Source: Stegostoma tigrinum | Lineage: Eukaryota | Assembly (NCBI RefSeq): GCF_030684315.1 | Contig: NC_081387.1 | Location: 20,270,678-20,334,677, forward strand | Direction: 5' to 3' | DNA: 64,000 nt | In this document: in pieces, positions 20,416 to 59,844 of the stretch | Position numbering within the stretch: the first letter of the stretch is position 1 | Layout of the letters: every line of letters starts with the position of its first letter | Notes under the pieces: model-generated | Database searches by the model: none | Seen by the model: only the letters and a program-made list of their open reading frames with translations | Told to the model about the DNA's origin: nothing | Made by a program: the position numbers and the translations under genes

Positions 20416-21647
20416 CTATGGAAAACAAAAAAAAATCAAATTCAGCACTTATTTTCCAAGTTTCATTGTTACAATTCAATGCAATGCTCACTCAGCTTGA
20501 CACCAATATCCTTACACATTCCATTATTCATTGGTCTTAAGCCCTCACATTTACTTTCGCTCTTGGCTATCAATAATGGATATTTCTCCAGCTCCAGACC
20601 CCCAGCGTCCCCCGGCCCCCACTACCAGCACTACTAGTCTCTTCTGGTGCGTTGGTAGAGTTTCTATCTTTTGGCTGAAAGAACTAGATTCAATGCCTAC
20701 CTGTCCCAGATGTGTGTCATGACATGTTCAAGTAAGTTAATTAAAGTCACTATAATGGCATTAGAAGTATATTTTTGTGGCATTTATCATTGAATATGTC
20801 GGCTGAGCTCCTGTTGCATTTTGTATAAAGCAGTTGCGTGCCTCATACCTTGCAAGTTTTCATTCACCTGTTTGAAGTCATGATGTGTAACAGTAAATTA
20901 TTCCATGAAATACAACAGTTTGCAAGGCAGCCACCCCATATATTGAGCTGAACTGAAAGCGTTTTCTGAAGTGAGATATGGGCCACGACAACAATTAATT
21001 CTCTTTGTCTATCTATCTGGATATCTAACTCATCCAGCTCGAAATCTATCAGGTCTTCCTAATTTTAGACCCATCATGCATTCGTCCAACACATTCATTA
21101 TTGCTCTCATTCCCTTCGAGTAAACTTACATTTAACTGTTAACCTTGTTCCTGGTCCAAACTCCTCCTCAAAGGACAATATTACCTGACAGTAATACATG
21201 CCCGAATCATCTTGTTTCAGATTCGTAATCGTGATGGAAGCATTTCGATTGGTTCTGAAAGAGAGCCTGTCTACCTGGATTATCCTACCCAAGAATTTTT
21301 CAGACTTATTGGCTACTTTGGTATCTACTGTTCCATTTTTAATGTCTTTGTGCCACGAGAAAGCTCCAACCAGTTGATCATGAGGTGAATTATAAGTGCA
21401 GAGAAAGTGAGCTGTTTCTCCCTCTGTAGCTTCAATGTAGAGAGGTTCTTGATGCACTTGGAATTTACTTGCGTCTGTGGCTGTAAGGTAAATTTCAATA
21501 GCTAAGATGTGGTATTATTTTTTATTTTATCATATGCTTCTGCAGCTACTTAAATTTGCTCTTCCATACAGTAACTACATGTAGAAAGAAAATGAACAAC
21601 TCACTCAACAATAGTATCGAAGCCCAGAGTAGTCTAATGGGGTTCAT
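20288..21647 (-). CDS. NCR3: Gene B: NKp30/NCR3-like activating-type single-V receptor. Exons 21647-21605 (leader), 21480-21130 (V), 20415-20288 (stalk/TM); 173 aa if the TM exon reads through to its TGA
   Basis: Phase-1 GT-AG joins give MNPIRLLWASILLLTTDASKFQVHQEP...FLCTYN...GAFSWHK...DDSGMYYCQVILSFEEEFGPGTRLTVKCRQPLVSSRRSLLWQMILITLKLAVFSACIIITISLAYFSES*. The V domain aligns by eye with human NKp30, and the TM has a basic residue as NKp30 does. Family-level call; one-to-one orthology not proven. Confidence 0.8.
21130..21480 (-). CDS. Gene B Ig V-set exon with germline-joined J-like strand
   Basis: Canonical C..W..DSGxYYC and FGPGTRLTV; acceptor ttacag, donor T|gtaagt; 351 nt, phase 1-1. Confidence 0.95.
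21605..21647 (-). CDS. Gene B leader exon (MNPIRLLWASILLL)
   Basis: ATG at 21647, hydrophobic core, strong donor A|gtgagt, phase 1, 124-nt intron to the V exon acceptor (ccttacag). Confidence 0.85.
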
Positions 21648-31666: not shown

Positions 31667-31672
31667 TTTATT
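31667..31672 (-). promoter_or_regulatory. Candidate polyadenylation signal for gene A
   Basis: AATAAA on the - strand about 470 nt after the stop codon. Confidence 0.35.
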
Positions 31673-32144: not shown

Positions 32145-32429
32145 CTACAAGCACACTGCTGCATACACGATCTGCTCGCCCTTCGTTCCGGCTGTCGGTG
32201 GGGTACTGAACCGAACCCCAGCCTCGCTCTGACCCTGTTGTGGTGAGGCCGAGTACACTATCGACACTTCATTACTTTTTGGAATTGGCGCCGACCCTCT
32301 CTTTGCTGGGTTTTCTGTCTGCGCGCTCAACCACTTTGTCTCGCTCACAGCCTGATCTGGATGACGGTGGATGTTTGAGCGGCTGATATTCAACTTCGTA
32401 TAAATTGTGGCATTGGACAAGTCTTCATC
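32145..32429 (-). CDS. Gene A terminal cytoplasmic exon with ITSM/ITIM-like motifs
   Basis: ttttcag acceptor, phase 0: DEDLSNATIYTKL...SIVYSAS...EQIVYAAVCL*. Confidence 0.85.
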   Translation of the reverse strand, partial: DEDLSNATIYTKLNISRSNIHRHPDQAVSETKWLSAQTENPAKRGSAPIPKSNEVSIVYSASPQQGQSEAGVRFSTPPTAGTKGEQIVYAAVCL

Positions 32430-35400
32430 CTGAAAATAACCAGATCATTTGTTACAATATTTGTAAATAACGGACGGCAGATTCTCTAGGTGAGAAAATA
32501 TATAACTAGCTACTACAATAGTGCTGATATATTTCCTAGCCTTTTGCTGTGGGTTTCGAATAAATGCTTTCTTCTTCGTTATTGTATTGGGCATCTTGCA
32601 CTTCACGACCCATAACACCGCGCAAACTGGACAGAATTATACCAGTGTTTGTGAAATATCTGCTTTGATATTATATACCACCGTGTCATGTGCTAAAAAA
32701 ATTTCCCTGACCTTATGCAACTGCAAAGGATTTTTTTCTCGGCTGTCGCTGGTAACATTTTTAAAGCATTTTTACATCAGAAACAACCCTCCGTTTTCGA
32801 TGTCACAACAGCCAGTGGGTAATGGAAATTTTGCATTCGTTGCGGGAATGAGCAAAAAATTGACCATGAACCCACTTGCTTTGCATTCCGGGCGCAAGAT
32901 GGGAGTTTCATCTCACAAACGATTACAGGAAAGATAGACTGACAATGAGTTTGCGCACTACTCGCTCACACTCTAGACCTGTACTTGGTCTAAGTCCACA
33001 GCACTCAAGTGACAAAGCCAACAGAGTTTCCACTTTAATCACTTCAAAGCAATCATGGCCTGTGCGCACTGTCGGGAGGCACTGTCATTTAGTAACAACT
33101 GAAGATAAAATGGTGAAGCAGAGCATGAGACGTTAACGTAGAGCATTGAACAGTACCGCTCGGGAAGAGGCCCTTCAGACCACAATGTTGAGCCGAACAT
33201 GACGCCAAATTAAACTAATCCCATCTGCCTGCCTTGGTCTATGTCGCTTCATTTCTTGCATATCCATATGCTTATCTAAAAGTCCCTTAAACGCGCCGAT
33301 CGTGTCTGCCTCCACCACCACCCCGACAACGCTTTCCAGGCTCTTAACATTTTCTGTGTTAGAAAAAAAAACTTGCCCTTCACATATACTTTGAACTTTC
33401 GCCTTCTCACTTTACGAGCATGCTCCTTAGTATTAGATATTTCAACTTTGGGTAAAAGATTCTGACTGTCAACCCTACATATGAATCCCTTAATTTTATA
33501 GACTTCAATTAAGTCGCCCTTCAGCGCCCGCCACACCCCCCCCCCCCCCCGTTCTCGAGAAATTAACCCGGGTTTTCCTAGCCTCTCCTTATAGCTCATA
33601 CCCTCTAATCCAGGCAGCATCCTGGTAAACCTCTTCTGCACCCTCTCCCAAAGCCTCGGCATCCTTCCTGTAATGTAGCAACCAGAATTGAACGCAGTAC
33701 TTCAAGTGTGGCCCAACTAAAGCCTTTGAAAGAAGCAAAAGACATCCTGACTCCGGCACTCAATTAATCGACCACTAAAGGCCTGCATGCCACATGCCTT
33801 CCTTACCACCCCGTTTACTTGCTTGGCCATTTTCAGGGGTCGAGTAATCGAATTCGCGTGACGCAATGTACAATTTTAAAAAAAACTAGCTTGCAGTGAT
33901 GTCTCTAGTGTAAGGAAAGTTTGTAAGAATAAAAACAAAATGATCAGCAGCTGAATGCAAGGAGCAAGAGTCTTTTCTTCCGAAGGTATTAAAAAAATTG
34001 AGAGCAGGGATATTGGGCAGTCTCTAGCGGTTCGGAAGCAGAATTTATAAGAGCGATGCGTGGCTGGATGCACTCTAGATTTCATATCTAGAAACGTTGG
34101 GACGCCGGAGACAGTGGTCAGCTTGTCTTGTTAATAAGAAGTCGCAATGGATTTGTGCTAGAAAGTAAAATTACTACCTTCCTCTAGGATAAGGACAATA
34201 GAAACATAGGATCGTAGAATCCCCACATGGAAGCAGGTCTTTCGGCAAATCGAGCCTGCACCGACCTTCCCAACAGCGTCCCACCCCACGCAGACCCACC
34301 CCACTATATGCCTGCAGCCCGCATTTCCAATGCTCGATTCACATAGCCTGCAAATCCCTGGACACTTTGGGCAACGTAGCGCGGCCAATATACCTAACCG
34401 GCACAGTTTTGGATGTGGGAGGAAACCGGGCCACCAGGAGGAAATCTTCGCAGACAAACCAGATTTCCATTCTCCAGGCTTCGGTTATATTAAGCATTCC
34501 AGGATAAAATTTCACTTGTAGCCCGGCTTCGACGTTAGTGTTTCTCATTTTCATCTTCATCTGATCTGCTCACCGAACCCCCCCCCCCCCCCCCCCACCA
34601 CATACCCCGCCATCCCATCCTCACCCCCATAGAAAACGTGACACCAGTACAAACATTTGGATACAAACTGCCGACTCATTTAGTCACCATTTTGCCTGTA
34701 GAATAAACTGCACTTCAAATTGACATATCTTGCTGAATACTTGCTTCCTGCTCATATTCAAAGCTTGGAGTCAAGCACTTAATATTCCTTATTATTACTT
34801 GCCATCCTCATCTTTTGTAGCATAATGATCACGTATAATGTGAAACTTTCCCCTCATAAGCCTTTCTCAAAGATCATCACCTAAAATTGCCATCAATCTG
34901 AGTACAAAGCAAAAGCCTTAATGGGAATGGAGTACATACCTCATTTGCAACTTGGTCTCCAGTTCCGTTATCTATAAAAGTTATTTTTAATTGGTTAGAT
35001 ACCTTAAAGCAGGAACAAAATTAACAATTGCATAAATGCAGTGCTACCATCAAGGCATTAGGAAGAAAGATCTAGAACTTCTGCATTTCTTTACATGTTG
35101 ACTGCAGCAGTTCGAGAGGCAGCTTAACACCTCCTTCTGGGGGCACCTAGAGATAGTCAATAAATACTGGCCCAGCTACTGACATCTGAGGCCCACCCGT
35201 GAATAAATTGAAAAAAAAATCTTGGAGTTTGAATGTCAAAAAAGTGGCTCATGAGTGCTGGTCTCTTTAGTGAAGTATTTTCCTTTAAAAAAGAGACAAA
35301 GCTTACAAGAGGCTCTTCTGGAATAGTGATTGCCTAGCACTGTGATATCTTGAAAAGTGTCCATTTACAGAAGACATCTTCAAATGCACGGGGGTGGATA

Positions 35401-38400: not shown

Positions 38401-41400
38401 CAACGAATCTTGCCTATTATTGTTTATTATCATGCAAGGTGGTAGGAGTAAAAGTGTGAGATAACCTCTAATGAAAAATATTTAAAACTAGAAGGCAATA
38501 ATGAAACTTACCAACTTTGAAGTTGAGCATTTAAATACACTTTCAATATTCTACAATTTGAGCAATGATGCTTTTACTTTATGATACTTTACGAACATGG
38601 CACAAAAATGAGGAATGAATAGATGATGTAGTAATAATTTTTTGCATTTTTGTCTTTCTGATACATGGATAAGCATTATAATTTCCTAAAATCTTGGCTT
38701 TTACTATTCCTTTCTAGGGCTCTCCCCCTTGCTTTCCTTTCAAAAGTCTATGCTCGTCAACAAATAATTTGGCTAATTACGCCAACAGTTCAGAGAAAGT
38801 TTGAAAGTATGATCCCCAAAATATGCAGGTATACAAATCACCTCAAGCTGGATATCTTCTCTCTTGAGAAAAGAAGGTTGATACATAACCTGATTGGATT
38901 CTATTAAATTATGAAGGCTTTGTTACAATAGATACAGGGGAAATTTTCCTCTTACGGGCAATAGCTTAGATAGAAGCCACCAATACAAGATCACTATCAA
39001 GTATTTCCATGGGAAATTGAGAAGAAACTTCTTCCCATAAACTATGACGAGAACGTGAACTCATTACTACAGTATGAAGAGACTAACAGAGCCATAATTA
39101 AAAGTTAACTGAAATTCACATAAGGACATATAAATAGTTTACTAGATTTATTAGTTGAGACGATAATAGGGAGAGGGCCAAGAAGAGTAGAAACACTGTG
39201 CCGCAACTCATTCTACATTATTTTGTATTTGAATTCAGTAATTACCTGGAGGTCTGCTACTGTGCAGTGTAGAAATTATTTTGATTAAGATTATAGCGAA
39301 CAGCACCAGGACCACCACTGAAAATATCAGAAGATTGGTGTTCCACTGAATTGGAGATTGTGTTTCTTCAGAATCGATGTGAGCTGCAAATAGAGGAGAG
39401 AAAAACTATTTGTTTTGTTATGCCTTTGCATGTCTCTTTGTGCTTTTGTTAGTGGCTATATATTGGTTTCATGCTTAATTTAAAAGCAGCAAATAAGTAG
39501 CAATGTTGCAGTATGGTGCAGTGAGGTACTTAGTTGTTGAGCAGTAGAGCAAATAAAACTATTTCTCTTTTTATAACCCTCTTATAAGCTCCTCTGTGCT
39601 TTTCATTGCTGTTATTCTTAGTCATATGTTTTAGTTAAGGTAAACAAGACCGTTACAAAGATCATTTGTACAAAATAAGCACAAATAATATCAGCAGGCA
39701 AAGCCACAATAAAGAGTCAGTTGGGTGACTGCAAGCCTGTAGATGCCAGCAGACGTGGTTTAGTGGACGTTGGGGTAGAAGGTAGAGGAGGAGCAGGTGT
39801 GGATTGTAGCTACTGGGGGAAATGAAGTGTTGTACACTGTTCTGTGTATCTCTTCCTTTATCTGACTTGTAATCTATTTCAGAACAAAATGCTCATCATA
39901 TAAACTGCTTACATTCCATTAATTTGAACTTCTTAGGAAAGCTATATTGGTTAAAAATGGATTCAAAAATGCTGCTAATCTGAATTTAACATACAATAAT
40001 TCATTCTAAATTAAATATCAATAACTATGTACCACCCATCCTCCGCTCGATTAAATGATCAATTAGACTCAGACAAATTTATAATTAATTTACCCACTCA
40101 GCTTAGGGCATCCTTATGCTACTTTGTGAAGATGATCGAGATAGCTGACGGTGTTGAAGCCGTCTTAAGTTGCAAAACATGTAGAACAAACCAGTTATTA
40201 TTCAAATGTGATTATAACAACCAGCACCAGGACCACCATTGAAAAGACAAGCAGATTTGGAGATGGCGTTTCTCCAGAATCAATATGAGCTGAAAATATG
40301 GGGGAGAAAAACCATCCATTTCATTATGTCTTTCCTTTTCTCTTTGTGTTTTTAGTGGTTGCTATATTGGTTTCACACTTCATTTAAAAGCTGCAAATGA
40401 GTAACAAAGTTGCAGTACAACATTGCAGAGCACCTGGACAGTGAGTGGATGAAACGGAAAAAAACTAAGTATTTTTTCATCATCCTCATCTGTGATTTTC
40501 ATTGCTGTTGTTGTTAGTCATATATTTCAATTAAGATAAACAAGGATATATAGAAGATCATTTGTACAAAATAAGCAAGAGTATGATCAGCCAACAAAGC
40601 CACAATAAAGAGTCAGTTGGGTGATTGCAAGCTTGTGGATACCAGTAGAGGTGGTGGACGTTGACATGGAGAAGGGGAGGAACAGGTGTAGATTGTAGTA
40701 ACCGGGGAGGTGAAATGTTGGACACTGTTCTGTGTATCACTCCTTTCTCTCAGGTAATTTATTTTAGAATAAAAATTCTTCTCAAATAATAACTTATTTT
40801 CTGTCAATTTAATCTTCTCAGCAATGCCATACAGCTTCAAAATGGATTTAAAAATGCTGCAGATCTGAATCTAATCCATAATTATTCATCATAAATTAAA
40901 TATCAGTAACTATGCACTACCCATCCGCCACCTGATTCAGTAATCAATTAGAATAAGACAGTTTTGCAACTAGTTTACCCACTGAAACTTAGAACCTCTT
41001 CATGCTACTTTGCAAAGATAATACCAATATATGACGGCATTGAAGCTATCATAAATTGCATATCATGTAGAAGAAACTAGCCAGCTATTAGTCAATTATG
41101 ATTGCATGTGTGATGGCTAAAGCAAGTGAATTTCTTTAAAAGAAACAGTTTCCTGGAAAGAAAATGGAAAAGAAAGGATATTTTGATCTGATGATCCCTT
41201 CTTTATAATTGTCTAATCACAGGACAATAGTTGCCAAATGTGTACCGATGCAATTCAAACATATTATGCAATTCAGTTCAAATAAAATAAAGGATCCTGC
41301 TTCTGCTAGGTTTTCATCAGGTCATTCGCTATTCTGACTACTATTGTCAAGGTGCTGCACCAACACTAGCATTTATTGCCAAGTTAGGATGCAAGGGTGG

Positions 41401-44400
41401 AATTGAACTTGGGTTCCTAGTGCTGTGAAGCAGCAGTGTTAGCCACTGCACCACTGCATATAGCATTTAGCCCTTTCTCTGTCAGGTGCTATCTAGCTGT
41501 CACATGTATGTTTCAAAATTATTCACTTTGCTTGTTCCACATTGCATCAGGCTTCAGATTCTCACAATTCCCTGAGTAAAGAATTTGCACTGTTCCAGCA
41601 GAATCAGTTAGAGTGAAATTCCATTTGTTTAAAATGTAATTATCCATTAACCATCAGCAAAGGTACAAATTTCAAAAGTGTAGATTAATATTCTGTGACT
41701 TAATTTTGAAATATCATTGCCACTGTGTAGAATAATATACTCTGCGGTTTCTCTGAAAGTAATCCTGATACAGGTCAGTGAACTCCAAGTACACAAAAAT
41801 GTTTATCTCTGGGGCTAAGTGTTTCAGTCTAATTTGTGATAACATGCTTCAGTTATTGATTGATTGATTCTCAGTCATGAATTTGAATCTAATCAAACTA
41901 ATTCCTTCAAGTTATGAATTGCACATCTGCAGTGAACAATTCCATTACTTGTGAGTTTCATGCACTCATCGCATTAGTTTGGTTGCACAAAAAAAACCCT
42001 CTAGAGAGTGCCGATGGATCAGTTCAAAAATTTGATGTTTCGCAACACAATCGTAAGTTTTCATGACGTAAAAAAATCTCATAGATAATCAAGAGATAAT
42101 TCCAAAAATTCGCGCACTCTGTGGTCGAAGAACTCAGCGTATCTGTGCAAAGGACAAAGCTGTTGCATTTTCAATCATCTGCAGACAAGTACAGTCAATT
42201 TTCCTTCTCGGCTGTTTCCAGAACACTGTATCATTGAGGATTCCAGTGCTAAACCAATTCAATTCACTGCACGTCATGCAACCAGGAGCTAACTGCACCG
42301 GACATGGCCACAAAAGACCCAAATCTGTTAACCAGTTCTGTCTTTAGCTATTTAGTTCAGCTACATCATTGATATATAATTAACAAACATAACATGACTC
42401 TTTCATGAGAAAAGTAAAACTCAATCCAGCCAATTACTGCCCACCAGACTTGCCCCAAATATCAAAGAAGTAATGGGGGTTTCCTCAGCAGTTTATAAAA
42501 TAACAAGTGATCCATAATAACCGATGACATTTTTGCTTTCCGTCAGGGCTAACCTTTTCTTGAGCTGTTAACACTTTGCACTCAAATTGACAGTGCTAAA
42601 CACGAGCGGGAAGGAGAGACGTGCTGCCATGTGATGAAATACTCTACATTTGCCCCAGTGACATGCAAGAAATTCAAACTTTTCCAAAATAAACTAGCTT
42701 TATTTTTGGAATCCCTTCCCAGCACCTTCAATATTCAGTAGCAGCAATCTATAAGTTGCACTGCAAGGACTCATCATGTTTTCTTTGACTGCATTACTCA
42801 AATTTAGGATTTCTATTAACTGGGCTGTGTGACATCAACACAAGCTGTGTGTCGGCCTCCAGACCATCACCATTCTGATGAAACCTAAATAAGGGTAAGA
42901 TGGGGAGCTGAAATAAAAACAGAAAGGGCTAGACAAAATCAAGCTTCTCACCGAAGCACCAGAGAGCAAAACAAAGTTAACGTTTGAAGTTCAATATACC
43001 TTCTCTTTGGGTCTCTTTCTGACTTGGCAAAGCTTTTCCCTTTTTTCATTGCTGCTGGGCAACTTTCTGAGCCTTTCTCCTTTCCAGAGCTTACAAGAAC
43101 TGAAACCACACCACATTCTGGCACTCCTATCATGTTCTAATGGTTTCATAGAGGCAACAAGTCATATTAGCATACCTCCATATGAATTATCAGCAGCAGA
43201 ATACCACATTTCTTCTGAAGGTTACTCTGCCAGTCAGTAATATTATATTTGATTTTATTACTTTGACCATTCATCTGCTTGCTTATCAAAAATCTATCTA
43301 AATTTCATTTAAAGCACTCAAAAACTTTTCTTTGAAAGTCTTCCAACATGCTTTGAGGAAAGAAGATCCAAAGACTCTGGCATTTTGAGAATGAAAACAA
43401 CCTTACCTCTGCTATTAAAATTTCTGCTACCTAAATGGGAGTAAATTTCTGCTAGTTGACATACAACAGCTGAAGTTGTTGTACTTTTTTCTTTTTTCCA
43501 TAAATCATTTCAACTGTTATCTTTAATCAATGCATGCACGATTCTCCTAGCCAAGGATATTTCCATTCAAAATTCCATTTTGAGTGTAAAGACAGAAAAG
43601 TTGGAAATGTTTTTAACCAAGGAATTGTCAATGTTTCAGGCGCAATTTTACTCACTGTTGGCATAAATTGGACAGTGACCTAGGGCAGCTTTGGAAAACT
43701 TATTTTCCATTTTGATTTCGAAGGCAACGGGCTTGTTTAAAATATCTCTGTAGAATGTATTCTCGAGGTTTCATTCTAATTGCTGATCATTATCCAATGG
43801 TTTTGCCAGAAATGATTGTCTTTTCACTTACAAGATGCCTGAGCTATTCAGTTTCACCTTTAGGAATGCGTTGGAAGTAATCTTAAACCCAGAAGGCAAG
43901 CTGAACCCTTCACAACGTCACTGATCTAATCACTTCTGTAAATACCAACACAACATCTGCCTCTTGCGATGAGCAGGTCACGATTACAATTGTTCTGTAT
44001 ACTAAAAGGATCAGGCGTGATTGGAGAATTTAACATAGCTGAACAGTCACATGAATAAATTCAGAAGTCATGTTGACTTTTCGCTCCAACAGAATTCAGC
44101 GAGATGAGGCAGATGAAATTTAGCTCAGAGAACAGTGGACTGGGAGGGAGAATAAGGCATTCTGAGATAGAAGTGGTGCAGAAATATAACGATCATGTGT
44201 GGATATTGTTGAAGTTGGTATGGGAGATTTAGAAAGTGGGTTAAAAGACACTGAAAGTATGAGTCCTATAAAGAAAGGCAAGGCGTACAGAAACATGCAA
44301 AGTATGGGGGATATTTCTAAAACTCTATTTCAGACTTACTTGCGTTGTTACACAATATTTTGGGCCGTACAATATTAAAAAGATATGGTGACTCGATAGA

Positions 44401-47400: not shown

Positions 47401-50400
47401 GTTGTGGGGACATAGCGATGGCACCCATCTTATTTTGGAGCTCCACCAATATTGGTTCAATGAACGAGCTCTCCAGCATGTCCTCTCTGAGTGCAGACTT
47501 AACATTCTTCCTGATTAGTAATGAGCCGCCTTCGCCTCTTTTACATTCTTCTTTAGTTGGTCTAAAACAACAAAACCCTGGCACATTGAGCAGCCAATCC
47601 TGTCCTTCTTTCAACCAATTCATTTAAATGGCCTCAACAACATAGTTCCATGTATTGATCCAGGCTCGAACCTTGGAGGCAATAAGGACGGTAGATGACG
47701 GAAGCCAGTGTCAATAGATGTAAAGCTGGAAAGGCACTGCAGGTCAGACACCATCCAAGGAATAGAAAACTTAACAATCTGGGCTGAAACCCTTTGTCAG
47801 GACTGGCGACGGGGTGGGGAGCCCAGAAGTAAATAGAGGGAAGTGTCTGGTCTGGGCGAAGGTTAGGTGGGATGGTAATAGTTGGGCACAGGTAGGAGGT
47901 TATTATGATTAGTCAGTTTGAAGAGTGGAGTGGATAGGTGAGTAGGAAAATAGGCAGGTGAGGTTAGGTCAGGGAAGCGAGAGGGCTGGACATGGGGCTG
48001 GGAATGGATGGTTTTTGAGGCTGGTGAAGTCAGCATTGAGGCCATTGGGCAATAAGCTCCAAAGGTGAAATATCAGATGTTTTCCTCCAGCATACAATTG
48101 TGCTCACTCTGACAGTGGAGTAGGCCAAGGATGGGCATGTCACCAGGTAAGTGGGAGGGGGAATTAAAATGGATGGTAACGGGAAGGTTAGATTGGTTGG
48201 TGTTGACAGTGCACAGATGCTCCATGAACTGGTCCGCGAGCCTGCGTCTGGTTTCCCCAATACAGATGAGACCACTTTGGGGGCAATGGATACGTTAGAT
48301 CAGGTTGGAAGAAGTGCAGGTGAATCTCTGCTAGATCTGGAAGAATTGTTTGGGACCTTGTACGGAGATGAGAGGGCAAGTGTACAGGCAGGTGTTGCAT
48401 CTTTTGCATTTGGCAGGGAAAGGTACCGGGTGTGGTCGAGAATTTGGTAGGAGTGGGTGTAGAGCTGACGAGAGAGTTCTGGAGTGAACAGTCCCTGTGG
48501 AAAGTGACAAGGATGGGGAAGGAAATATATTTTTGGTGGTGGGGTCTGCTTGTAGGTGGCAGATGCTGAATTGGACTCAGAGGTTGATGGGGGGGTATGT
48601 GAAGACTAAGGGGACTCTATCCTTGTTGTTGGGGAGAGGGGTTTGAGGGTAGAAGGGCAAGAAAGGGCGGAGGTATGGTTGATGACATCCTTAATTACAG
48701 AAGATGGTAAATACTGGATCCTAATGTAGGTTAATATCTGGGATGCCCTGGAGTAAAATGCCCCATCCTGGGAGCAGATGCTGCAGAGGCAGAGGAATTG
48801 AGAGTATAGGATAACATTTATGCAGAAGGGCAGGTGAGAGATGGTGTACTCGAGGTAGTTGGGCGAGTCAGTGGATTTGAAATGGGTGTCATTGGTGAGT
48901 CAGTTTCCAGAGATGCAGATAGAGAGGTCCCGGAAATGGATGGAGGTGTCAGAAATGATCCAGATGATTTTGAGGGCAGTGTGCAAGGTATTGATGAAGT
49001 GGATGATCTGCTTGAGCTCTTTGTGGGACCAGGAGGCAGTACTGAAGTAGTCATTAGTATAACAGAGAAAGAAGTGAAGGATGGTTCTGGTGTAGGTGTG
49101 GCAGAGGGACTGTTCCGTGAATCCTACAAAGAGGCAGGCATACCTCAGGCCCTTGCAGTTAACCATGGTTTGTAGGAATTGAGAGGAATCAAAGGAGAAA
49201 TTGTTGTGAGTGAGGACCAGTTCAGCTAAGTGAATGAGAGTGCCAGTGGAGAGCAGGAAGTAGAGGGTCTTTAGACCCTCCATATGGGGAATACAGGTGT
49301 AAAGGTGCTGTATGTCCATGGTGAACATGAGATGCTGAGGGCCAGGCAATTGAAAGTTTCGGAAAAGATGGAGGGCGTGGCTTCTGTTACAAATGTAGGT
49401 AGGAAGTTCCTGGACTAAAAGGTAAATAACAGAGTCGCGGTAGGAGATGAGCTGAGTGGGGCAGGTGCAGGCAGAGAGAATGGGTTGACCGGGGCATTTG
49501 GTTTTATGACTTTTGTTTAGAAAAGAAGCTGTTTCTGATCCTGTTTGGGCATGTAGTACTCCCTCATCAGCTTTGCACACCCCACCAACTTCTCCACCAC
49601 ACCAGGTACCTTTCCCTGCAAACGCAAGAGGTCCAATACCTGCCCCTTCTTATCTCTGTCGAAGTACGCATACAATTCTTTTAGATCCAGCAGAGATTCA
49701 CCTGCACTTCGTCTAAACTGACCTAGTGTATCCATTGCTCCCAATGCGATCTCCTCGATATTGGGGAGACCAAACATTGACTTGGGAGCCAACTTACAGA
49801 GTATCTATGCTCTGCACACACCAACCAATCCCATCTTCTGATTCCCGTCCATTTTAATTCCCCCTCCCACTCTCCTGGAAACAAGTCCATCCCTGGCCTC
49901 CTCTACCGTCAGAGTGAAGCCAAATGTAAACTGGAGGAACAACACGCGATATTTCGTTTTGGGAGCTTACAGCCCAGAGGCCTCAATATTGACTCCACCA
50001 GCTTCAAAATGTCTCCATCCCCAGCCCTATCCTCTGTCCAGCCCTCCCCTTCCTCCACACATCCCTGACCTGGCCTAACCTGCCTGTCCTCCTATTCACC
50101 TATCCTCTCAGCCCTTCCCAGTGACCAGTCACAATAACCTCCTCCTTGCGTCCACCCATCAACATCCCACCTACCCTTCTCCCAGCCCTAACTCCTCCAT
50201 TTATTTACTTCTGGGCTCCCCTCCCCCTCGGTCCGAATCGTTGACTTTCCTGCTCCTCGGATTCTGACTGACCTGCCGTGCTTTTTAAGCCTCACATTAA
50301 TTGACTCAGGCTCTACGTTCAACTGCCGTCCTCCTTGCGTTGAAATGAACACAGCTCAGTCCATTAGTACCGTCGCGTTCATGTACCTGTCTCTGCCTGC

Positions 50401-51292
50401 TCTTTCTTTCTGATTTACTGGTTCCACTATGTACCTTCTTCTCATTCCCTGCACTTGCTGACCTGCTGCTTTGGCTCCCAGCCCCCTGCCACTCGAGTTT
50501 AAACCCTTCCAAGTAGCACCACCGCACCTCCCCGAGAGGCTACTGGCTCCCCTCTGGTTTAGCTGCAACCCATCCCTCTTCTACAGATTACGACCGTCCC
50601 GGAAGAGGTCCCAATGATCCAAAGGACGTGAAGCCTTCGCCCCTGCACCAGCTCCTGAGGCACGCATTCATCTACCTATTTCTTGCCTCAATAGCACCTA
50701 ACCCAGAGATTACTGCCCTCGAGGTCCTGCTTTTCAGCCCCTCTCCTAAATCCCTGTACTCGCTCCGCAGCGCCTCATCCCTCTTTCTACCTATGTGGTT
50801 GGTACCAGTGTGCGCCACGACCTCTGGCTGTTCAAGCTTCCCAGTTTCCATTTATATATATTTTGGGGAGGTGATGGTTGGGGGACGGAGGGTGGTGAGA
50901 GAGTGGATCAATCTACAAAGTGAGAGTGATAAACGTACCATTTACTGTGACTCTTATGCCTTCTCCAGTCCCGCTCCCACCACGGATAACATGGACCTCG
51001 CAGTAATACGTTCCTGTATCGTTCAGTTTCGTCTCGGTTATTGATATCGACGCTATTTTCAATTCGAGGAAGGACGATGCATCGGTGTGCAGGACGCGGC
51101 CGAAATATCCTGCGCAATTGTTGCAAACTTCAGAAGTCTTATAATCTTTGTACCACATGTAGGAACCTATCAGTTTGCTTTTTGAATGGGTGGTATCCAC
51201 ACTAAAATTGCAGTGTAGATTCAACGTGTCACCCTTGGTAACGTTAATCGAGACCGGAGTTTGGTTGACTGTGACTCTGGAGTCAGTGATTC
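32145..51292 (-). CDS. Gene A: NKp30-family single-V receptor with long tyrosine-motif (ITSM/ITIM-like) tail, inhibitory-type. Exons 51292-50939, 39383-39246, 34971-34940, 32429-32145; leader not resolved
   Basis: The four exons join in frame (phases 1,1,0) with GT-AG sites, giving about 269 aa plus leader: V, AHIDSEETQSPIQWNTN, TM LLIFSVVVLVLFAIILIKIISTL, tail with TIYTKL, IVYSAS, IVYAAV. Additional small exons in the long introns cannot be excluded. Confidence 0.75.
33140..33840 (-). mobile_element. CR1/HER1 3' fragment
   Basis: ERVQKRFTRMLPGLEGMSYKERL...LKGDLIEVYKI. Confidence 0.9.
34198..34455 (-). mobile_element. HE1-type SINE, 5'-truncated
   Basis: Reverse-complement similarity to the HE1 core and tail. 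Confidence 0.75.
34940..34971 (-). CDS. Gene A short cytoplasmic exon (DNGTGDQVANE)
   Basis: cttttatag acceptor, GAG|gtatgt donor; its 32 nt convert phase 1 to phase 0, exactly as needed to join the TM exon to the last exon. Confidence 0.7.
35340..37257 (+). mobile_element. CR1 RT-to-3' fragment, interrupted by a SINE at about 35476-35817
   Basis: LSKFAVDTKIG.VVDSEED, GDLIEVYKI, 3' tail ctgtgactctatgac. Confidence 0.88.
35476..35817 (-). mobile_element. HE1-type SINE inserted in CR1
   Basis: cctgcatatctttggactgtgggaggaatccggagcac...gaaacccac core. Confidence 0.85.
38076..38395 (+). mobile_element. HE1-type SINE
   Basis: cagtggttagcactgctacctcac...agggacccc head and HE1 core. Confidence 0.85.
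39246..39383 (-). CDS. Gene A stalk/transmembrane exon
   Basis: Acceptor ctctcctctatttgcag, donor CAG|gtaatt, 138 nt, phase 1-1, encodes a long hydrophobic helix. Confidence 0.85.
39289..41103. repeat. Diverged tandem duplication, units about 39289-40209 and 40210-41103
   Basis: Colinear similarity throughout (e.g. cagcaccaggaccacca, atcatttgtacaaaataagca, cacaataaagagtcagttgggtga, aaaatggatt.aaaaatgctgc); gatt at all three boundaries. Confidence 0.9.
40198..40289 (-). CDS. Gene A duplicated truncated TM exon; candidate alternative terminal exon with GPI-signal-like C-terminus
   Basis: Intact acceptor (atattttcag), phase 1, open frame AHIDSGETPSPNLLVFSMVVLVLVVIITFE*; paralogous to exon 39383-39246. 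Confidence 0.55.
44100..44830 (+). mobile_element. Decayed CR1 3' fragment
   Basis: Residual CR1 3' coding and tail sequence (tgaaatgcactacctgagagtg). Confidence 0.55.
45020..50840 (-). mobile_element. Near full-length degenerate CR1/HER1 LINE (ORF1 remnant, APE, RT, 3' end), split by the Penelope insertion
   Basis: KSCLTNLIEF, DFSKAFDKVPH, LQLYKTSVRPYL, HFGSSGHNSL, CVHFNAR and ORF1-like VVAHTGTN. Confidence 0.9.
47668..50306 (-). mobile_element. Degenerate Penelope-like element (RT on -, inverted 3' copy about 49510-50306 on +) inserted in a CR1
   Basis: ORF 48900-49580 RT motifs (FTMDIQHLYTCIPH, YACLFVG); caggctc duplicated at 47661-47667 and 50307-50313. Confidence 0.85.
50939..51292 (-). 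CDS. Gene A Ig V-set exon (NKp30-like)
   Basis: LNLHCNFS...IGSYMWYKD...ASISI...DTGTYYCEVHVIRGGSGTGEGIRVTV resembles human NKp30 YVCRVEVLGLGVGTGNGTRLVV; acceptor ttttacag, donor G|gtacgt; 354 nt, phase 1-1. Confidence 0.93.
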
Positions 51293-52105: not shown

Positions 52106-53264
52106 GAAACGTTTTTGGGTTTGGAGGGCAATCGCAATTCTACTTTGTGCTCGGACCAATGAGTTGAAAGTGTACCCAGGACGGTTAAGGGTCAAATTAT
52201 CATTTAATTAAATTTTCCTGCTCGAGGAGAGGGGCAGTTTGAAGTGCTGTCTCAATGGGAAATATAAATACAAGCAACTCGACAGTTAACTTTTCAATCA
52301 TTAAAATGGTCGGCTATTTTGCAGTTGAGGCGCAATTCATTTTCAGTTACCAGAAGACAACCACTTAATATAGATGAGGGAGTTTATGGGGACCTAGTAC
52401 TTTGCATCTCTTGAATGTCATCCCTGTTTCCACTATTCATAGGGTGATGGAGCTAGCCATGAGTCTGGGAAACCATTCCAAATTCTTGGCAATACAATGC
52501 ACGTCTTTTTAAAACCAACCTTACCTGAGGGTCACCGAGGACTTAAGTGCATTACTAACGAGGCCCATCTCGACTTCCACTAGGACAGAACGTGAAAGGC
52601 TTTTTGAGACCTAATACCACATGAAGCAACCTGGGCTGTAACTCGATGTTCCATTCACGAACTTGAACGCAAGTGATGCAGTTCTCGGAACTTTCCGATT
52701 CTGTTGTCTATTTGAAGCATATGGACAGGTTTGCTTGGGGATTTTCTTTTATCAGCGATTAATATTAGCCATACCTAATGGTATTTATATAGTGTCTTTA
52801 TATTAAGAAACATCAAGCGTGGCGTCAAAGTAGGCTCAGATTAATTGCTGAAGAATCGATCCGCCAATTGAGTAGCTGTATAATTTCTCTCAGTGTCGGT
52901 ACAATTCATTGTGGAAACAAATTAATATGTCTGCAGCACTTTGCAGTACGGTATGAAGGATTTGCTTTATACGTGTGTTTGCATGTGCAGGTTTATAGAT
53001 GCCTGCAAAACAGCACACATGTTCTGTGTGCGTGTGTGGATGTGTGGGAATCTGTTCATTCACAAAAAAATACCGTGGTTGTGGATTACTTACTCGGGTA
53101 CAACAGCAAGAGCCAAATAATTCGGTTCGACAACATGGTCCCGCGGCTGTCTGCCGATTACAGAAGAGTTTCTTTTAAGATCGGTTTTTAGAAGCAATCC
53201 ATTCTGCACTGTCAAAAATCATGATGAGTCTACACATTATCTTGTATTATCTTTATCTTATTAC

Positions 53265-55169: not shown

Positions 55170-58100
55170 ACGCTTGAGTAGACTTGTAGCCCAGGTCGCG
55201 GATGCTGTAGTTGGTTCTCTCGCCGAGCTGGGTCGTTAGTTCGCAAGGCGTTTCATTACCCTGCTGGGTAACATTATCAGTGCAGCCTCCGGGGAAGCTC
55301 TGTTACGTGATCCCGCCTAATATTTAAACTCAGGGGGTCCACTGGAATTGGTTACGTCATTTCCGCTTTTTTTTCTCAGTGGTGTATATGGGGGGTCTAA
55401 TTCTGCGTGTTTATTGTTGGCCCTCTCGGTGGAGAGCCAAGCCTCCAGCAATCCCCGTGCTTGACTCTATTTGGCCTGTCCTAGGATCCTGATATTGTCC
55501 CAATCAAACTGATGGTTCTCCTTATCCGTGTGAATGGAAACGAGTGAGTACTGGTCATGTCTTTTTGTTGCTTGTTGGTGTTCTTGTATTCTTGTGGCCA
55601 GTTTCCATCCTGTCTGTCCATTATAATGTTTGTGGCAGTCTTTGCATGGGATCTTGTAAATGGTTCTGTCTATCGTGGGTAAGGGGGTAAGAAGAAGACC
55701 TCTACCAACTATTTAAGGACAAGGGATACTCCAACAGCTGGGTCCTACCACGCCTATCACATAAACAGCAACAGGAAGATATAGTAAGTCCTGACACACC
55801 TGTCACATTACCATACACCAAGAACATATCTGAACTGACCACAAGACTCCTATGACCATTGGGCATCAGAGTGGCACACAAACCTACACAAACCCCATGC
55901 CAACTGCTAACTGGAAACAAAAGACTTCTACTCAGTATGGACAGAACCAACGTGATATACAAGATCCCATGCAAACACTGCGACAAACATTACATTTGAG
56001 AGACAGGAAGGAAACTGGCCACAAAAATGCAAGAACACCAACTAGCGACGAAAAGACATGACTGGTACTCAGAGATAATGGGAACTGCAGATGCTGGAGA
56101 ATCCAAGATAACAAAGTGTGGAGCTGGATGAACACAGCAGGCCAAGCAGCATCTTAGGAGCACAAAAGTTGACGATTCGGACCTCGACCCTTCATCAGAG
56201 AGGGGGAAAGGGAGACGATTCTGAAATAAATAGGGAGAGAGGGGGAGGCGAACTGAAGATGGATAGAGGAGAAGATAAGTGGAGATGAGAGTATAGATGG
56301 GGAGGTAGGGAGGGGTTAGGTCTGTGCGGGGAGGATGGACAGGTCAAAGGGGCGGGATGAGGTTAGTAGGTAGGAAATGGAGGTGCGGTTTGAGGTGGGA
56401 GGAGGGGATAGGTGAGAGGGAGGTGGGGACGAGCTGGGCTGGTTTTGGGATGCAGTGGGGGGAGGGGAGATTTTGAAGCTCGTAAAATCCACATTGACAG
56501 CATTGGGCTGCAGGATTCCCAAGCGGAATATGAGTTGCCCGGGTGGCATCATTAGGGCACTGCAGCAGGCCCAGGATGGACATGTCGTCTAAGGAATGGG
56601 AGGGGGAATGGGCCCAAGCTATGCCTGCCTCTTTGTAGGTTACAGTGAACAGTACCTCTTCCACAACTACACTGGCCCTAAACCCCACCTCTTCCTCCGT
56701 TACATTGATGACTGTATCGGCGCCACCTCGTGCTCCCAAGAGGAGCTTGAACAGTTCATCCACTTTACCAACACATTCCACCCCAACCTCAAGTTCACCT
56801 GGATCATCTCCAACACATCCCTCACCTTCCTGGACCTCTCTGTCTCCATCACTGGCAACCACCTAGAAACCAATGTCCATTTCAAGCCCACCGACTCCCA
56901 CAGCTACCTAGAATACACCCGCTCTCAACTACCTTCCTGCAAAAATTCCATCGTCTATTCCCAATTCCTCTACCCCGGCTGCATCTGCTCCAGGATGAGG
57001 CATTCTACTCCCATATATCCCAGATGTTCTCATTCTTCCAGGACTGCATGTACCCCCCCCCCCCCCGGGGTGGTCAAGTATACCCTCAAATGTGTCTCCC
57101 GGACTTCCTGCACCTCATCCCTCACACCCCACCCTCGCAATAACTGCCACAAAAGAATCCCCTTCGTTCTCACATACCACCCCACCAACCTCCGGATACA
57201 ATGTATCATCCTCCGACACTTCTGCCATCTACAATCCGACCCCACCACCCAAGACATTTTTCCATCCCCACCCTTGTCTGCCTTCCGGAGAGACCACTGT
57301 CTCCACGACTCCCTTGTTCGCTCCACACTCCCCTCCAACCCAAACACACCCAGCACTTTCCCCTGCAACTGCAGGAAGTGCTACACTTGCCCCCACACCT
57401 CCTCCCTCACCCCCATCCCAGGCCCCAAGATGACTTTCCACATCAAGCAGATGTTCACCTGCACATCTGCCAATGTGGTATACTGCACTTGCTGTACCCG
57501 TTGTGGCTTTCTCTACATTGGGGAAATCAAGCGGAGGCTTGGGGACAACTTTGCAGAACACCTCCGCTCGGTTTGCAACAAACAACTGCGCTTCCCAGTC
57601 GCGAACCATTTCAACTCCCCCTCCCATTCCTTAGATGGCACGTCCATCCTGGGCCTCCTGCAGTGCCACAATGATGCCACCCGAAGATTTCAGGAACAGC
57701 AACTCATATTCCGCTTGGAAACCCTGCAACCCAATGGTAACAATGTGGATTTCATCAGCTTTAAATCTCCCCTCCACCCACTGCATCCCAAAACCAGCCC
57801 AGCTTGTCCCTGCCTCCCTAACCTATTCCTATTCTCGCCTATCCCCTCCTCCCACCTCAAGCCACATCTCCATTTCCTACCAACTAACCTCATTCCGCCC
57901 CCTTGACCTATCCATCCTCCCCGGGCTGACCTATCCCGTCCCTACCTCCCCACCCATACTCTCCTCTCCACCTATCTTCTCCTCTATCCATGAACACCGC
58001 AGGCCAAGCAGCATCTCAGGAGCACAAAAGCTGACGTTTCGGGCATAGACCCTTCATCAGAGAGGGCCGAAGAGATTACAAGAGAGTTGCAGTGGGAGAG

Positions 58101-58865
58101 GGATTCCCTGAGGTTGGTCCGGAGGGAGGAGGGTAACGTCTTCAAGTTAGGCATCCCCGAAAGAGGCTTCGCAGTGAGGTTAAAATTGTGATCAGAGATA
58201 ATCAGATGATGAAGGTTCTAGGTGAAGGGTCTAGCCCCGAAACATCAGCTTGTGTGGTCCTGAGCTGCTGCTTGGCCTGCTGTGTTCATCCAGTTTCACA
58301 CTTTGTTATCTTGGATTCTCCAGCATCTGCAGTTCCCATTATCTCCTCTCATCTATCCATCTTCGGTCTGCCTCCCCCTGTCTCCCTATTTATTTCAGAA
58401 TACTACCCCCATCCCCCTTTTCTGATGAAGGGTCTAGGCCTAAAACGTCAGCTTTTGTGCTCCTAAGATGCTGCTTGGCCTGCTATGTTCATCCAGCTTC
58501 ACACTTTATGACCTGTACTCACCTGTTTCCATTCACACGGATAAGAAGAACCACCAGTTTGATTCGGCCAACATCAGGATCCTCGGACAGGTCAAACAAA
58601 GGCCAGCACGGGATTTTCTGGAGTCCTGGTTCTCTACCAAGAGGGCCAACAATAAACTCATAAAATTAGACCCTATGTATACATCGCTGCGAAGAAAAAC
58701 TGGAAATGAGGTGACCGATTCCAACGGACCCCAAAGTTTGAATACCAGGCGGGAAAACACAACACTTCATCGGAGGCTGCACTGATGATGTTACCCAGCA
58801 GAGTAATGAAACATCTGCAAACTAACGAACCAGCTCGGCGAGCCAACGAAGCACATCACCCCACA
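55170..58865 (+). mobile_element. Second Penelope-like family: inverted 3' copy 55170-55690 (-), direct copy 55700-56071 resuming at 58508-58865
   Basis: GIY-YIG remnant (NVIYKIPC..C..HYI.ETGRKL) and pLTR homologous to 3240-3720; interrupted by the element at 56072-58507. Confidence 0.85.
56072..58507 (+). mobile_element. Penelope-like element (RT + GIY-YIG) with inverted 5' pLTR and rearranged 3' pLTRs
   Basis: ORF 56596-57906 has MGPSYACLF, FLRYIDD and VVYC..C..CGFLYIGE.KRRL; 56072-56600 is an inverted copy of its 3' end; hammerhead cores in the pLTRs. Confidence 0.92.
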
Positions 58866-58873
58866 CATTTGCA

Positions 58874-59047
58874 AGTGTGTGTGCGTGCGTGTGTGTGTGT
58901 GTGTGTGCATGCGCACGTGCGCGAGCATACATGCGTGCGCCTGTGTGTGGAGGACAGAGAGAAAGACCGTGTGTGAGAGAGAGGAAGAGAGTGTGTATGT
59001 TTGTAAGGCAGAGAGAGAGCGTGTGTGAGGAAGAGGGAGACAGAGAG
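58874..59047. repeat. (GT)n/(GC) alternating tract followed by GA/GT low-complexity sequence
   Basis: Direct observation. Confidence 0.9.
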
Positions 59048-59844
59048 TGGCACCTCCACATCATGGCTGTAGGATGAACCACTCTTCCGCTCTCTTGTGT
59101 TCTGCATATCAACTGAAGTTTAACTTTCATCCATCCGAGTGTATTAGTTCTTGGGCCGTAGATTTTTTTTTGAAATGCAAATCGGCTGCCTGCTTTCATT
59201 CCGACCCATCTGCAATACATGTGAAAATTGAGCCTGTTTAGAAGCAGGCTGAACAATGTGTCATCCCCCGTCCACCCTTGACACCATGTTGTACATTTTC
59301 TTTACGGTCGAGTCTTATGTTTTATTTTCTGATGTCCGAAAATTTCTACACTAAGGTGACATGTTAAAGTGCGCGATCCACGGTATTACGACAAAAAGAT
59401 AACGTTTCTTGGAAATGTCTTCCTCATCTCGTTGGAAACAGAGATACTATGACAAGTAGAAACAATTTTGATGTTTAAATTAAATCAAGCAGTAATCAGA
59501 TGATTCTTCACTTATCCTTTCAATTCCGCTTGCCTTCCTTCGCCTTCTCTTTCTCCTGTCCGAAAGTGGAGATGAAAGCTATTTTGCACATCCCTCTCTT
59601 TTAGATTTAAATTCATTTGATATTCTCATTTGTACCTAGGCACAGTGAAAAGTGGATAACGTCGCCAAGTTCCACCGCCATCTGGAATTACGGAATGAAC
59701 TGCTGAATAAATTGTATAAATAGTTAAAAACCGAGTAAATTAATAGTTAATTAGTATTACTAAATCTGAAATAACTCCCAAAGATCATCTTTCCCTCTCC
59801 GTAAACTTCAGTCTCTCAAATCCTCCAGTCGCCGCACTCCTACA

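What the first reader, a model, noticed from the sequence alone, without database searches (positions are those of the whole stretch)
39246..41103. Tandem duplication turned half a TM exon into a GPI-signal-like terminal exon (candidate decoy isoform)
Seen: the ~0.9 kb duplication breaks inside the TM exon, leaving an upstream copy with an intact phase-1 acceptor and open frame AHIDSGETPSPNLLVFSMVVLVLVVIITFE*. Over 26 aligned codons I count 13 substitutions, 7 of them synonymous. All TM changes stay hydrophobic, the only indel is an in-frame 15 nt (between ccaat repeats), and E>G creates a small-residue D-S-G site, followed by a 6-aa spacer and 17-aa hydrophobic end. Established: this layout fits GPI signals, and GPI-linked CEACAMs arose from TM-exon truncation. 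Inference: gene A can switch between a signalling inhibitory receptor and a tailless/GPI, sheddable decoy. Caveat: I saw no canonical AATAAA immediately downstream.
Basis: partly seen in the sequence, partly recalled or inferred. Interest (0 to 1): 0.8.

Follow-up and report, generated by a model that had tools for sequence, protein, structure and literature searches.

The report
Half-exon duplicate in shark NKp30-like gene
An old 0.9 kb tandem duplication left a second, truncated copy of the membrane-anchor exon inside a shark immune-receptor gene; it could in principle encode a tailless or lipid-anchored form, but nothing found here shows that it is used, and it looks like a drifting leftover.

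Summary
On the minus strand a ~0.9 kb tandem duplication (units about 41091-40210 and 40209-39289) copies the end of a 10.6 kb intron plus the first ~95 nt of the transmembrane (TM) exon. The gene is NKp30/NCR3-like and has an ITIM tail. The upstream copy (40289-40198) keeps an AG acceptor, phase 1 and the stated open frame. I count the same 13 substitutions (7 synonymous) and the same in-frame 15-nt deletion.

The decoy-isoform interpretation is neither supported nor refuted.
- The stop and the hydrophobic end came with the duplication junction, so they did not need to evolve.
- The exon part is not significantly better conserved than the intron part (p=0.08; 0.20 after filtering).
- A neutral copy would often stay open: about 0.64-0.79 for no stop, times about 0.75 for keeping frame.
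- Pairwise dN/dS of 0.26 is explained by the genuine exon. Four of the six amino-acid changes and the deletion fall on the copy.
- There is no AATAAA or ATTAAA in the 814 nt after its stop. The real last exon has one 473 nt after its stop.
- No RNA run was found, and no short relative appeared in one length-limited protein search.

In favour: E>G and the deletion both move the copy towards a GPI signal. Most likely it is a largely unused pseudo-exon. The species name (zebra shark) comes only from other notes of this scan.

The parts
40198..40289 (-). Upstream half-copy of the TM exon (pseudo-exon or candidate alternative coding end). Phase-1 start, 29 full codons, then stop TAA at 40200-40198.
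   Evidence: sequence and translation; tblastn to the genuine exon.
40290..40311 (-). Acceptor AG (40291-40290) and polypyrimidine tract of the half-copy, 18 of 20 pyrimidines.
   Evidence: The genuine acceptor scores the same count.
40210..41091 (-). Duplication unit 1: the intron segment plus the first part of the TM exon.
39289..40209 (-). Duplication unit 2: the same intron segment plus the first part of the genuine TM exon. The junction has AATC microhomology at about 40213-40210.
39246..39383 (-). Genuine TM exon (AHIDSEETQSPIQWNTNLLIFSVVVLVLFAIILIKIISTLHSSRPP), phase 1 to phase 1.
   Evidence: 80% identical to the same part of P0002.
50939..51292 (-). IgV (VJ-type) exon of the gene, 354 nt, phase 1 to phase 1.
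   Evidence: Pfam V-set E 2.7e-10; best solved relative NCR3/NKp30, E 7.7e-9.
53094..53136 (-). Leader exon (MLSNRIIWLLLLYP plus one base), donor GT.
34940..34971 (-). Small cytoplasmic exon (NGTGDQVANE), AG and GT.
32145..32429 (-). Last coding exon, with TIYTKL (ITSM-like) and IVYAAV (ITIM) and stop TAG.
31667..31672 (-). Canonical AATAAA, 473 nt after the genuine stop. Serves as a positive control for poly(A) signals in this gene.
39908..39916 (-). Donor-like site AAT|GTAAGC (last exon base 39913). With the 40289 acceptor it would define a 377-nt cassette carrying the stop.
   Evidence: It matches 7 of 9 consensus positions, the same crude count I get by hand for the V exon's own donor.
40078..40083 (-). 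TATAAA, a weak poly(A)-signal variant about 115 nt after the half-copy's stop, followed by a T/G-rich run.
   Evidence: One of 12 weak-variant hexamer hits after the stop (13 listed, one of them overlapping the stop), so it may be chance.

Best explanation
A microhomology-mediated tandem duplication of about 0.9 kb copied the 3' end of the long V-to-TM intron together with the first ~95 nt of the TM exon of an NKp30/NCR3-like, ITIM-bearing receptor gene. The upstream copy is a half exon. It inherited the acceptor, the reading frame and the hydrophobic segment. It acquired its stop codon at once from the intron sequence that the junction placed behind it.

Since then it has drifted at about the neutral rate. 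It has no donor of its own and no canonical poly(A) signal. With an intron this long, I infer that the splicing machinery mostly skips it. Where its acceptor is used, the result would be a transcript with an early stop rather than a dedicated isoform.

Shown: the anatomy, the origin of the stop, the lack of a selection signal and the lack of a canonical poly(A) signal. Inferred: that it is mostly skipped.
For: Duplication and junction:
- Both the junction and the upstream intron boundary read a TAA at the same place after ...ATC. The intron copy reads ATC ATA ATT GAC TAA and the junction reads ATC ACA TTT GAA TAA. The frame was therefore closed at birth.

Conservation:
- The exon part has 13 mismatches in 80 positions. 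The intron part has 203 in 788, Fisher p=0.077.
- With poorly aligned intron blocks removed, the intron figure is 161 in 700, p=0.20.
- K2P distance is 0.186 for the exon part and 0.326 for the intron. Synonymous dS of 0.41 is close to the intron value, so there is no recent gene conversion.

Chance of staying open:
- In simulation, 64-79% of neutral copies keep 32 codons free of stops.
- About 75% keep the frame at the intron's indel rate.

dN/dS:
- Pairwise dN/dS is 0.26 (p=0.036).
- Polarised with the two shark relatives P0002 and P0006, four of the six amino-acid changes (E>G, I>V, V>M, A>V) and the 5-codon deletion fall on the copy. Two (P>Q, V>F) fall on the genuine exon.

Missing signals of use:
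- There are 0 AATAAA/ATTAAA in the 814 nt after the copy's stop. The real 3' end has AATAAA 473 nt after its stop.
- No RNA run was listed.
- No protein of 64-205 aa related to the V exon exists in the 5.8-billion-protein collection.
- The closest relative's 90% cluster holds one 294-aa protein only.
Against: - The acceptor is as good as the genuine one (18 of 20 pyrimidines each) and is met first by the polymerase.
- Two of the copy's derived changes are exactly those that favour a GPI signal. E>G makes the third residue of D-S-G small. The 15-nt deletion shortens the spacer from 11 to 6 residues.
- A donor-like site at 39913 and a TATAAA at 40083 could allow processing.
- Zero canonical poly(A) signals is itself not unusual: 15% of shuffles have none.
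- My RNA search was weak. A holder needed a twentieth of the words of a 9.9 kb stretch.
- The statistics have little power with 13 differences. Moderate constraint on the copy cannot be excluded.
Confidence: 0.62

Rival explanations
1. The half exon is a used alternative coding end. The V exon splices to 40289, translation stops at 40200-40198, and the product is a single-IgV protein with no tail. That protein is either GPI-anchored (cleavage at the Asp of D-S-G) or held by a 17-residue hydrophobic end. It would act as a non-signalling or sheddable decoy for the ITIM receptor.
For: - Intact acceptor, phase and frame.
- A leader exon is present.
- The D-S-G site, a 6-residue spacer (ETPSPN), 17 hydrophobic residues and one terminal Glu fit the textbook GPI-signal layout. 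That layout is recalled, not computed.
- By outgroup polarisation, E>G and the 5-codon deletion are derived in the copy, and both move it towards that layout.
- GPI-linked CEACAMs arose repeatedly by stops in TM exons of ITIM-type ancestors (PMC2832619, passages read).
- A protein-coding stop does not strictly need its own poly(A) site if the 39913 donor makes it a cassette.
Against: - No transcript evidence of any kind.
- No canonical poly(A) signal.
- A cassette form would carry an early stop upstream of later junctions and would be expected to be degraded (inference from the general rule of nonsense-mediated decay).
- No selection signal specific to the copy.
- The candidate cleavage site lies only four residues after the V domain's last strand, which may hinder processing. 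GPI-anchored single-V proteins with very short stalks do exist (recalled).
- No GPI predictor was run.
Confidence: 0.14
2. The half exon is used, but unproductively. Its acceptor pairs with the 39913 donor (a 377-nt cassette) or with the genuine TM donor (a 1,044-nt exon), which puts a premature stop into the mRNA. This lowers the output of the receptor, either as noise or as regulated 'poison exon' splicing.
For: - The acceptor is as good as the genuine one.
- The donor-like AAT|GTAAGC at 39913 matches 7 of 9 consensus positions, the same crude count I get by hand for the V exon's donor.
- The stop lies far upstream of at least two later exon junctions.
- No poly(A) signal ends the transcript there.
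Against: - No RNA evidence.
- Exons of 377 or 1,044 nt are long for exon definition (general knowledge).
- The consensus count is crude, and no splice-site scoring model was available.
Confidence: 0.2

Closest known systems
GPI-linked CEACAMs of primates and swine (CEACAM5-8 type)
   Same: An Ig-superfamily receptor lineage with an ITIM/ITSM tail in which a truncated TM exon (a stop shortly after the hydrophobic segment, plus small indels) became a GPI-attachment signal. This happened several times independently (PMC2832619, passages read).
   Different: In CEACAMs the change happened in the TM exon of a separate duplicated gene and is backed by ESTs and protein work. Here it is an extra half exon inside one gene, made by an intragenic tandem duplication, with no transcript, predictor or protein evidence.
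Tandem exon duplication giving alternative (mutually exclusive) exons
   Same: An exon and its flanking intron duplicated in tandem within a gene, and the copies diverged (PMC9013439 and PMC9741552, search listing and abstract starts only).
   Different: Those events copy whole exons with both splice sites, and the two exons substitute for each other. Here the copy lacks the 3' half and the donor, so it can only end the reading frame.
Human NKp30/NCR3 and its splice isoforms
   Same: A single IgV receptor. NCR3 is the best solved-structure match of the V exon. NCR3 isoforms a to c differ in their tails by alternative splicing and differ in signalling (PMC6514059, passages read).
   Different: Human NKp30 signals through a TM arginine and ITAM adaptors (PMC6514059). 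This shark gene has no charged TM residue and carries its own ITIM and ITSM-like tail. No tailless or GPI form of NKp30 appeared in the passages I read.
Receptors made in both TM and GPI forms by alternative splicing (CD58/LFA-3, NCAM) or by paralogs (FcgRIIIA/B)
   Same: One ectodomain delivered either with a signalling or TM tail or with a lipid anchor.
   Different: Those forms are shown at the protein level. Here only the DNA layout exists.

Membership tests
GPI-attachment signal (C-terminal propeptide) | N-terminal secretory leader on the same protein | tested here: inconclusive
   The leader exon reads MLSNRIIWLLLLYP and matches the start of P0002. No signal-peptide predictor was run.
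GPI-attachment signal (C-terminal propeptide) | Small residues at the cleavage site and two residues after it | tested here: met
   D-S-G at codons 40281-40273. The rule itself is recalled. The genuine exon has D-S-E.
GPI-attachment signal (C-terminal propeptide) | Polar spacer of about 5-10 residues, then a hydrophobic stretch of about 12-20 residues running to the C-terminus | tested here: met
   ETPSPN (6 residues), then LLVFSMVVLVLVVIITF (17 residues), then E and stop. The rule is recalled.
GPI-attachment signal (C-terminal propeptide) | Positive call by a trained predictor (NetGPI, PredGPI, big-PI); release by PI-PLC | not testable with these tools
   No predictor is installed.
Alternative last exon | Usable acceptor and in-frame stop | tested here: met
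   AG at 40291-40290, 18 of 20 pyrimidines, stop at 40200-40198.
Alternative last exon | Poly(A) signal downstream of the stop | tested here: not met
   0 AATAAA/ATTAAA in 814 nt, only weak variants such as TATAAA at 40083. The genuine last exon has AATAAA 473 nt after its stop.
Alternative last exon | Transcripts that use it | not testable with these tools
   The run search listed 4 runs, none on record as RNA. Read laying showed DNA contigs only.
NKp30/NCR3-like non-rearranging VJ receptor | Single V-set domain with a J-like G strand, closest to NCR3 | tested here: met
   Pfam V-set. The top four solved relatives are all NCR3, E about 8e-9. The G strand reads GTGEGIRVTV. The relative P0006 is named 'natural cytotoxicity triggering receptor 3-like' by NCBI.
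NKp30/NCR3-like non-rearranging VJ receptor | Charged TM residue for ITAM adaptors, as in human NKp30 | tested here: not met
   There is no Arg, Lys, Asp or Glu inside LLIFSVVVLVLFAIILI. The tail has IVYAAV and TIYTKL instead. It is an inhibitory-type relative, not an NKp30 equivalent.
Tandem-duplicated substitutable exon | A complete exon copy with its own donor | tested here: not met
   Homology ends at ATAATC (40210). The copy has no counterpart of the 39246 donor.

The most novel reading that the evidence does not exclude
A single intragenic half-exon duplication created, in one step, a ready-made alternative coding end in a shark NKp30-like inhibitory receptor. That end carries an acceptor, a hydrophobic segment and an immediate stop. 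Two later changes (E>G and a 5-codon deletion) tuned it into a GPI signal. One gene would then make both an ITIM-signalling receptor and a lipid-anchored, sheddable decoy with the same binding domain. This would be a within-gene version of what CEACAMs and paired receptors achieve with separate genes.
Probability: 0.12. Interest if true: 0.6.

Novelty: new member of a known kind. Interest (0 to 1): 0.25.

Why it matters
If the half exon were used, it would show a very short evolutionary route from a signalling immune receptor to a tailless or lipid-anchored decoy inside one gene. It would do so in the oldest jawed-vertebrate lineage and in a family (NKp30/B7-H6) of interest for the origin of antigen receptors. 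As things stand it is mainly a clean example of how a partial-exon duplication can leave an open, well-signalled pseudo-exon that looks functional. That is a caution for isoform prediction from sequence alone. Zebra-shark RNA-seq from several tissues is described in PMC10620051 (passages read), so the question can be settled cheaply.

Tried and rejected
Searches and tests that led nowhere:
- Short annotated isoforms. The search for homologous proteins with the V exon (candidates 64-205 aa) gave nothing. With P0002 it returned only P0002 itself. The collection seems to lack this gene's own product, so this is weak negative evidence.
- A local outgroup. No third copy of the TM exon or of the 0.9 kb unit exists in the window. 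The neighbouring VJ gene (V exon 21107-21457) has no similar TM exon. Polarisation therefore rests on two protein relatives only, and synonymous changes could not be polarised.
The other locus tools cover viruses, metagenomes and prokaryotes only, so I did not use them.
- RNA. The single run search returned DNA-like runs only. I chose a 9.9 kb stretch so as to include the 3' exon. In hindsight this raised the bar for a small RNA, because a holder needs a twentieth of the words.
- GPI-like relatives. Of 150 representative relatives, 5 end within 6 residues of a hydrophobic segment. At least two of the five have a charged residue inside that segment: P0045 has Lys and P0061 has Arg. They look like activating-type or truncated models, so none is clear support. 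None of the 150 ends like the half exon.
- Assembly artefact. Rejected: the copies differ by about 25%, and run contigs span both.
- Recent gene conversion. Rejected: dS of 0.41 is about equal to the intron K of 0.33.
- Papers not held: PMC4594805 and PMC3709836. What I say about shark NKp30 in those papers is recall only. I asked for no supplementary files. Supplemental Table 6 of PMC10620051, which lists the tissues, may bear on which RNA-seq sets to use.
- Dating. K of about 0.33 suggests an age of the order of 10^8 years if shark neutral rates are near 1e-9 per site per year. That rate is recalled and uncertain.

Full report
What is there

The feature lies on the minus strand, inside a gene that I mapped with the closest relative found. 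That relative is P0002, a 294-aa protein that NCBI calls an uncharacterized protein of Chiloscyllium plagiosum. The exons are:
- leader, 53136-53094;
- one IgV exon, 51292-50939;
- a transmembrane (TM) exon, 39383-39246;
- a 32-nt cytoplasmic exon, 34971-34940;
- a last coding exon, 32429-32145.

All have AG and GT where needed, and they join in frame. The V exon is a Pfam V-set domain. Its four best solved relatives are all human NCR3/NKp30, at E about 8e-9. A second shark relative, P0006, is named 'natural cytotoxicity triggering receptor 3-like'. The TM segment has no charged residue. Other notes of this scan call the genome zebra shark. I did not verify that.

The duplication

Eight direct-repeat blocks, 885-921 nt apart and 74-87% identical, tile 39289-41080. 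The alignment and BLASTN (E 4e-155 and 8e-158, with no third copy in the window) show two tandem units. Each consists of about 810 nt of intron plus the first part of the TM exon. Contigs of four DNA runs (two samples, one study, perhaps the assembly's own source) cover 38900-41400. Three runs do so in one piece and the fourth in three overlapping pieces, with one base difference at 40161. The structure is therefore in the DNA.

Homology ends inside the exon at ...ATAATC. The junction and the upstream boundary of unit 1 share AATC, a microhomology typical of such duplications. Behind the junction the sequence continues with the start of the repeated intron segment. In both copies of that segment a TAA stands at the same distance: ATC ATA ATT GAC TAA upstream and ATC ACA TTT GAA TAA at the junction. 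The half exon was therefore born with an acceptor, the frame, the hydrophobic run and an almost immediate stop. None of these had to evolve.

All are confirmed.
- The half exon is 40289-40198 and reads (A)HIDSGETPSPNLLVFSMVVLVLVVIITFE*.
- There are 13 mismatches in 80 aligned positions and one 15-nt gap.
- Seven differences are synonymous and six are not.
- The gap lies between two CCAAT copies.

Is the copy under selection?

I found no sign specific to it.
- The exon part is 83.8% identical and the intron part 74.2% (Fisher p=0.077). With badly aligned intron blocks left out, the intron is 77% identical (p=0.20).
- Pairwise dN/dS is 0.26 (p=0.036). One of the two branches is the working TM exon, so a value below 1 is expected.
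- Using P0002 and P0006 as outgroups at the protein level, four of the six replacements and the 5-codon deletion fall on the copy. Two fall on the genuine exon. That is the pattern of relaxed constraint on the copy. With so few changes it proves little either way.
- In simulation, 64-79% of neutral copies keep the 32 codons free of stops at 8-16% substitutions per site. The intron's indel rate predicts that about 75% keep the frame. An open frame is therefore unremarkable.
- The conservative nature of the TM changes follows largely from the genetic code. Three of the four changed TM codons differ only at first or third positions of NTN codons.

The copy's acceptor is as pyrimidine-rich as the genuine one, 18 of 20 each. 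Both derived changes outside the hydrophobic run go in the direction of a GPI signal. E>G gives D-S-G, and the deletion shortens the spacer from 11 to 6 residues. The CEACAM precedent is real: GPI-linked CEACAMs arose repeatedly by stops and small indels in TM exons of ITIM-type ancestors (PMC2832619, passages read). The GPI layout rules that I applied are recalled, not computed.

Points against use

No AATAAA or ATTAAA lies in the 814 nt between the copy's stop and the genuine TM exon. Shuffles give a mean of 1.84, and 15% have none, so this is only mildly unusual. The genuine last exon has AATAAA 473 nt after its stop. Only weak variants occur, for example TATAAA at 40083. The copy has no donor of its own. 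The only donor-like site is AAT|GTAAGC, ending at 39913. With it, or with the genuine TM donor, use of the 40289 acceptor would give a 377-nt or 1,044-nt exon with an early stop. By the general rule of nonsense-mediated decay (inference), that predicts an unstable message rather than a dedicated isoform.

Evidence I could not get

The one run search listed four runs, none on record as RNA. The V exon found no protein of 64-205 aa in the large collection. P0002 found only itself. The collection seems not to hold this gene's product, and no short relative of the bamboo-shark gene is annotated there. Among 150 representative relatives, none ends like the half exon.

Verdict

My estimates are:
- about 0.62 for a mostly skipped, drifting pseudo-exon;
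- about 0.20 for some unproductive use;
- about 0.14 for a functional tailless or GPI isoform.

Zebra-shark RNA-seq from several tissues is described in PMC10620051 (passages read) and would settle the matter.

Comparison with what is known

Switching between TM and GPI forms, and GPI signals born from truncated TM exons, are established (PMC2832619). Tandem exon duplication as a source of alternative exons is also established (PMC9013439 and PMC9741552, listing and abstract starts only). Human NCR3 has tail isoforms that differ in signalling (PMC6514059, passages read). A half-exon duplication giving an alternative coding end within one receptor gene would be a new instance of these known kinds, not a new kind. 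My searches for shark NKp30 literature turned up nothing on such an isoform. The two most relevant papers were not held.

Noticed in passing
window 21107-21457 (-): A second VJ-type IgV exon, ending in FGPGTRLTVK (Pfam V-set, E 1.3e-17). It is about 35% identical to P0002 in its V domain. It belongs to a neighbouring NKp30-family gene, and its TM exon is unrelated to the one studied here.
   Followed up: partly
window 40161: Contigs of all four DNA runs read T where the window has C on the + strand. This is a fixed difference or an assembly base error, 37 nt after the half exon's stop.
   Followed up: no
window 39908-39916 (-): A donor-like AAT|GTAAGC is present only in unit 2. The homologous place in unit 1 reads AAAATAAGT. 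It could turn the half exon into a 377-nt cassette.
   Followed up: partly
window 32430-34939 (-): P0002 has 12 residues (LCITEASRLKNL) between the small cytoplasmic exon and the last exon. I found no match for them in the window. The window's exons join in frame without them, so one micro-exon may be missing or lost.
   Followed up: partly
window 41390-41450 (-): A tRNA-like stretch just upstream of unit 1 looks like a tRNA-derived SINE. It was not run through any tool.
   Followed up: no
window 56596-57906 (+), 60929-62581 (-), 48900-49580 (-), 62591-63070 (-): Long ORFs with a reverse-transcriptase-like look, probably LINE or other retroelement remnants, upstream of the gene's leader and in the V-to-TM intron. 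Not searched.
   Followed up: no
window 58850-59110: A CA/TG-rich low-complexity run gives mirror ORFs full of C, V, H and T on both strands.
   Followed up: no
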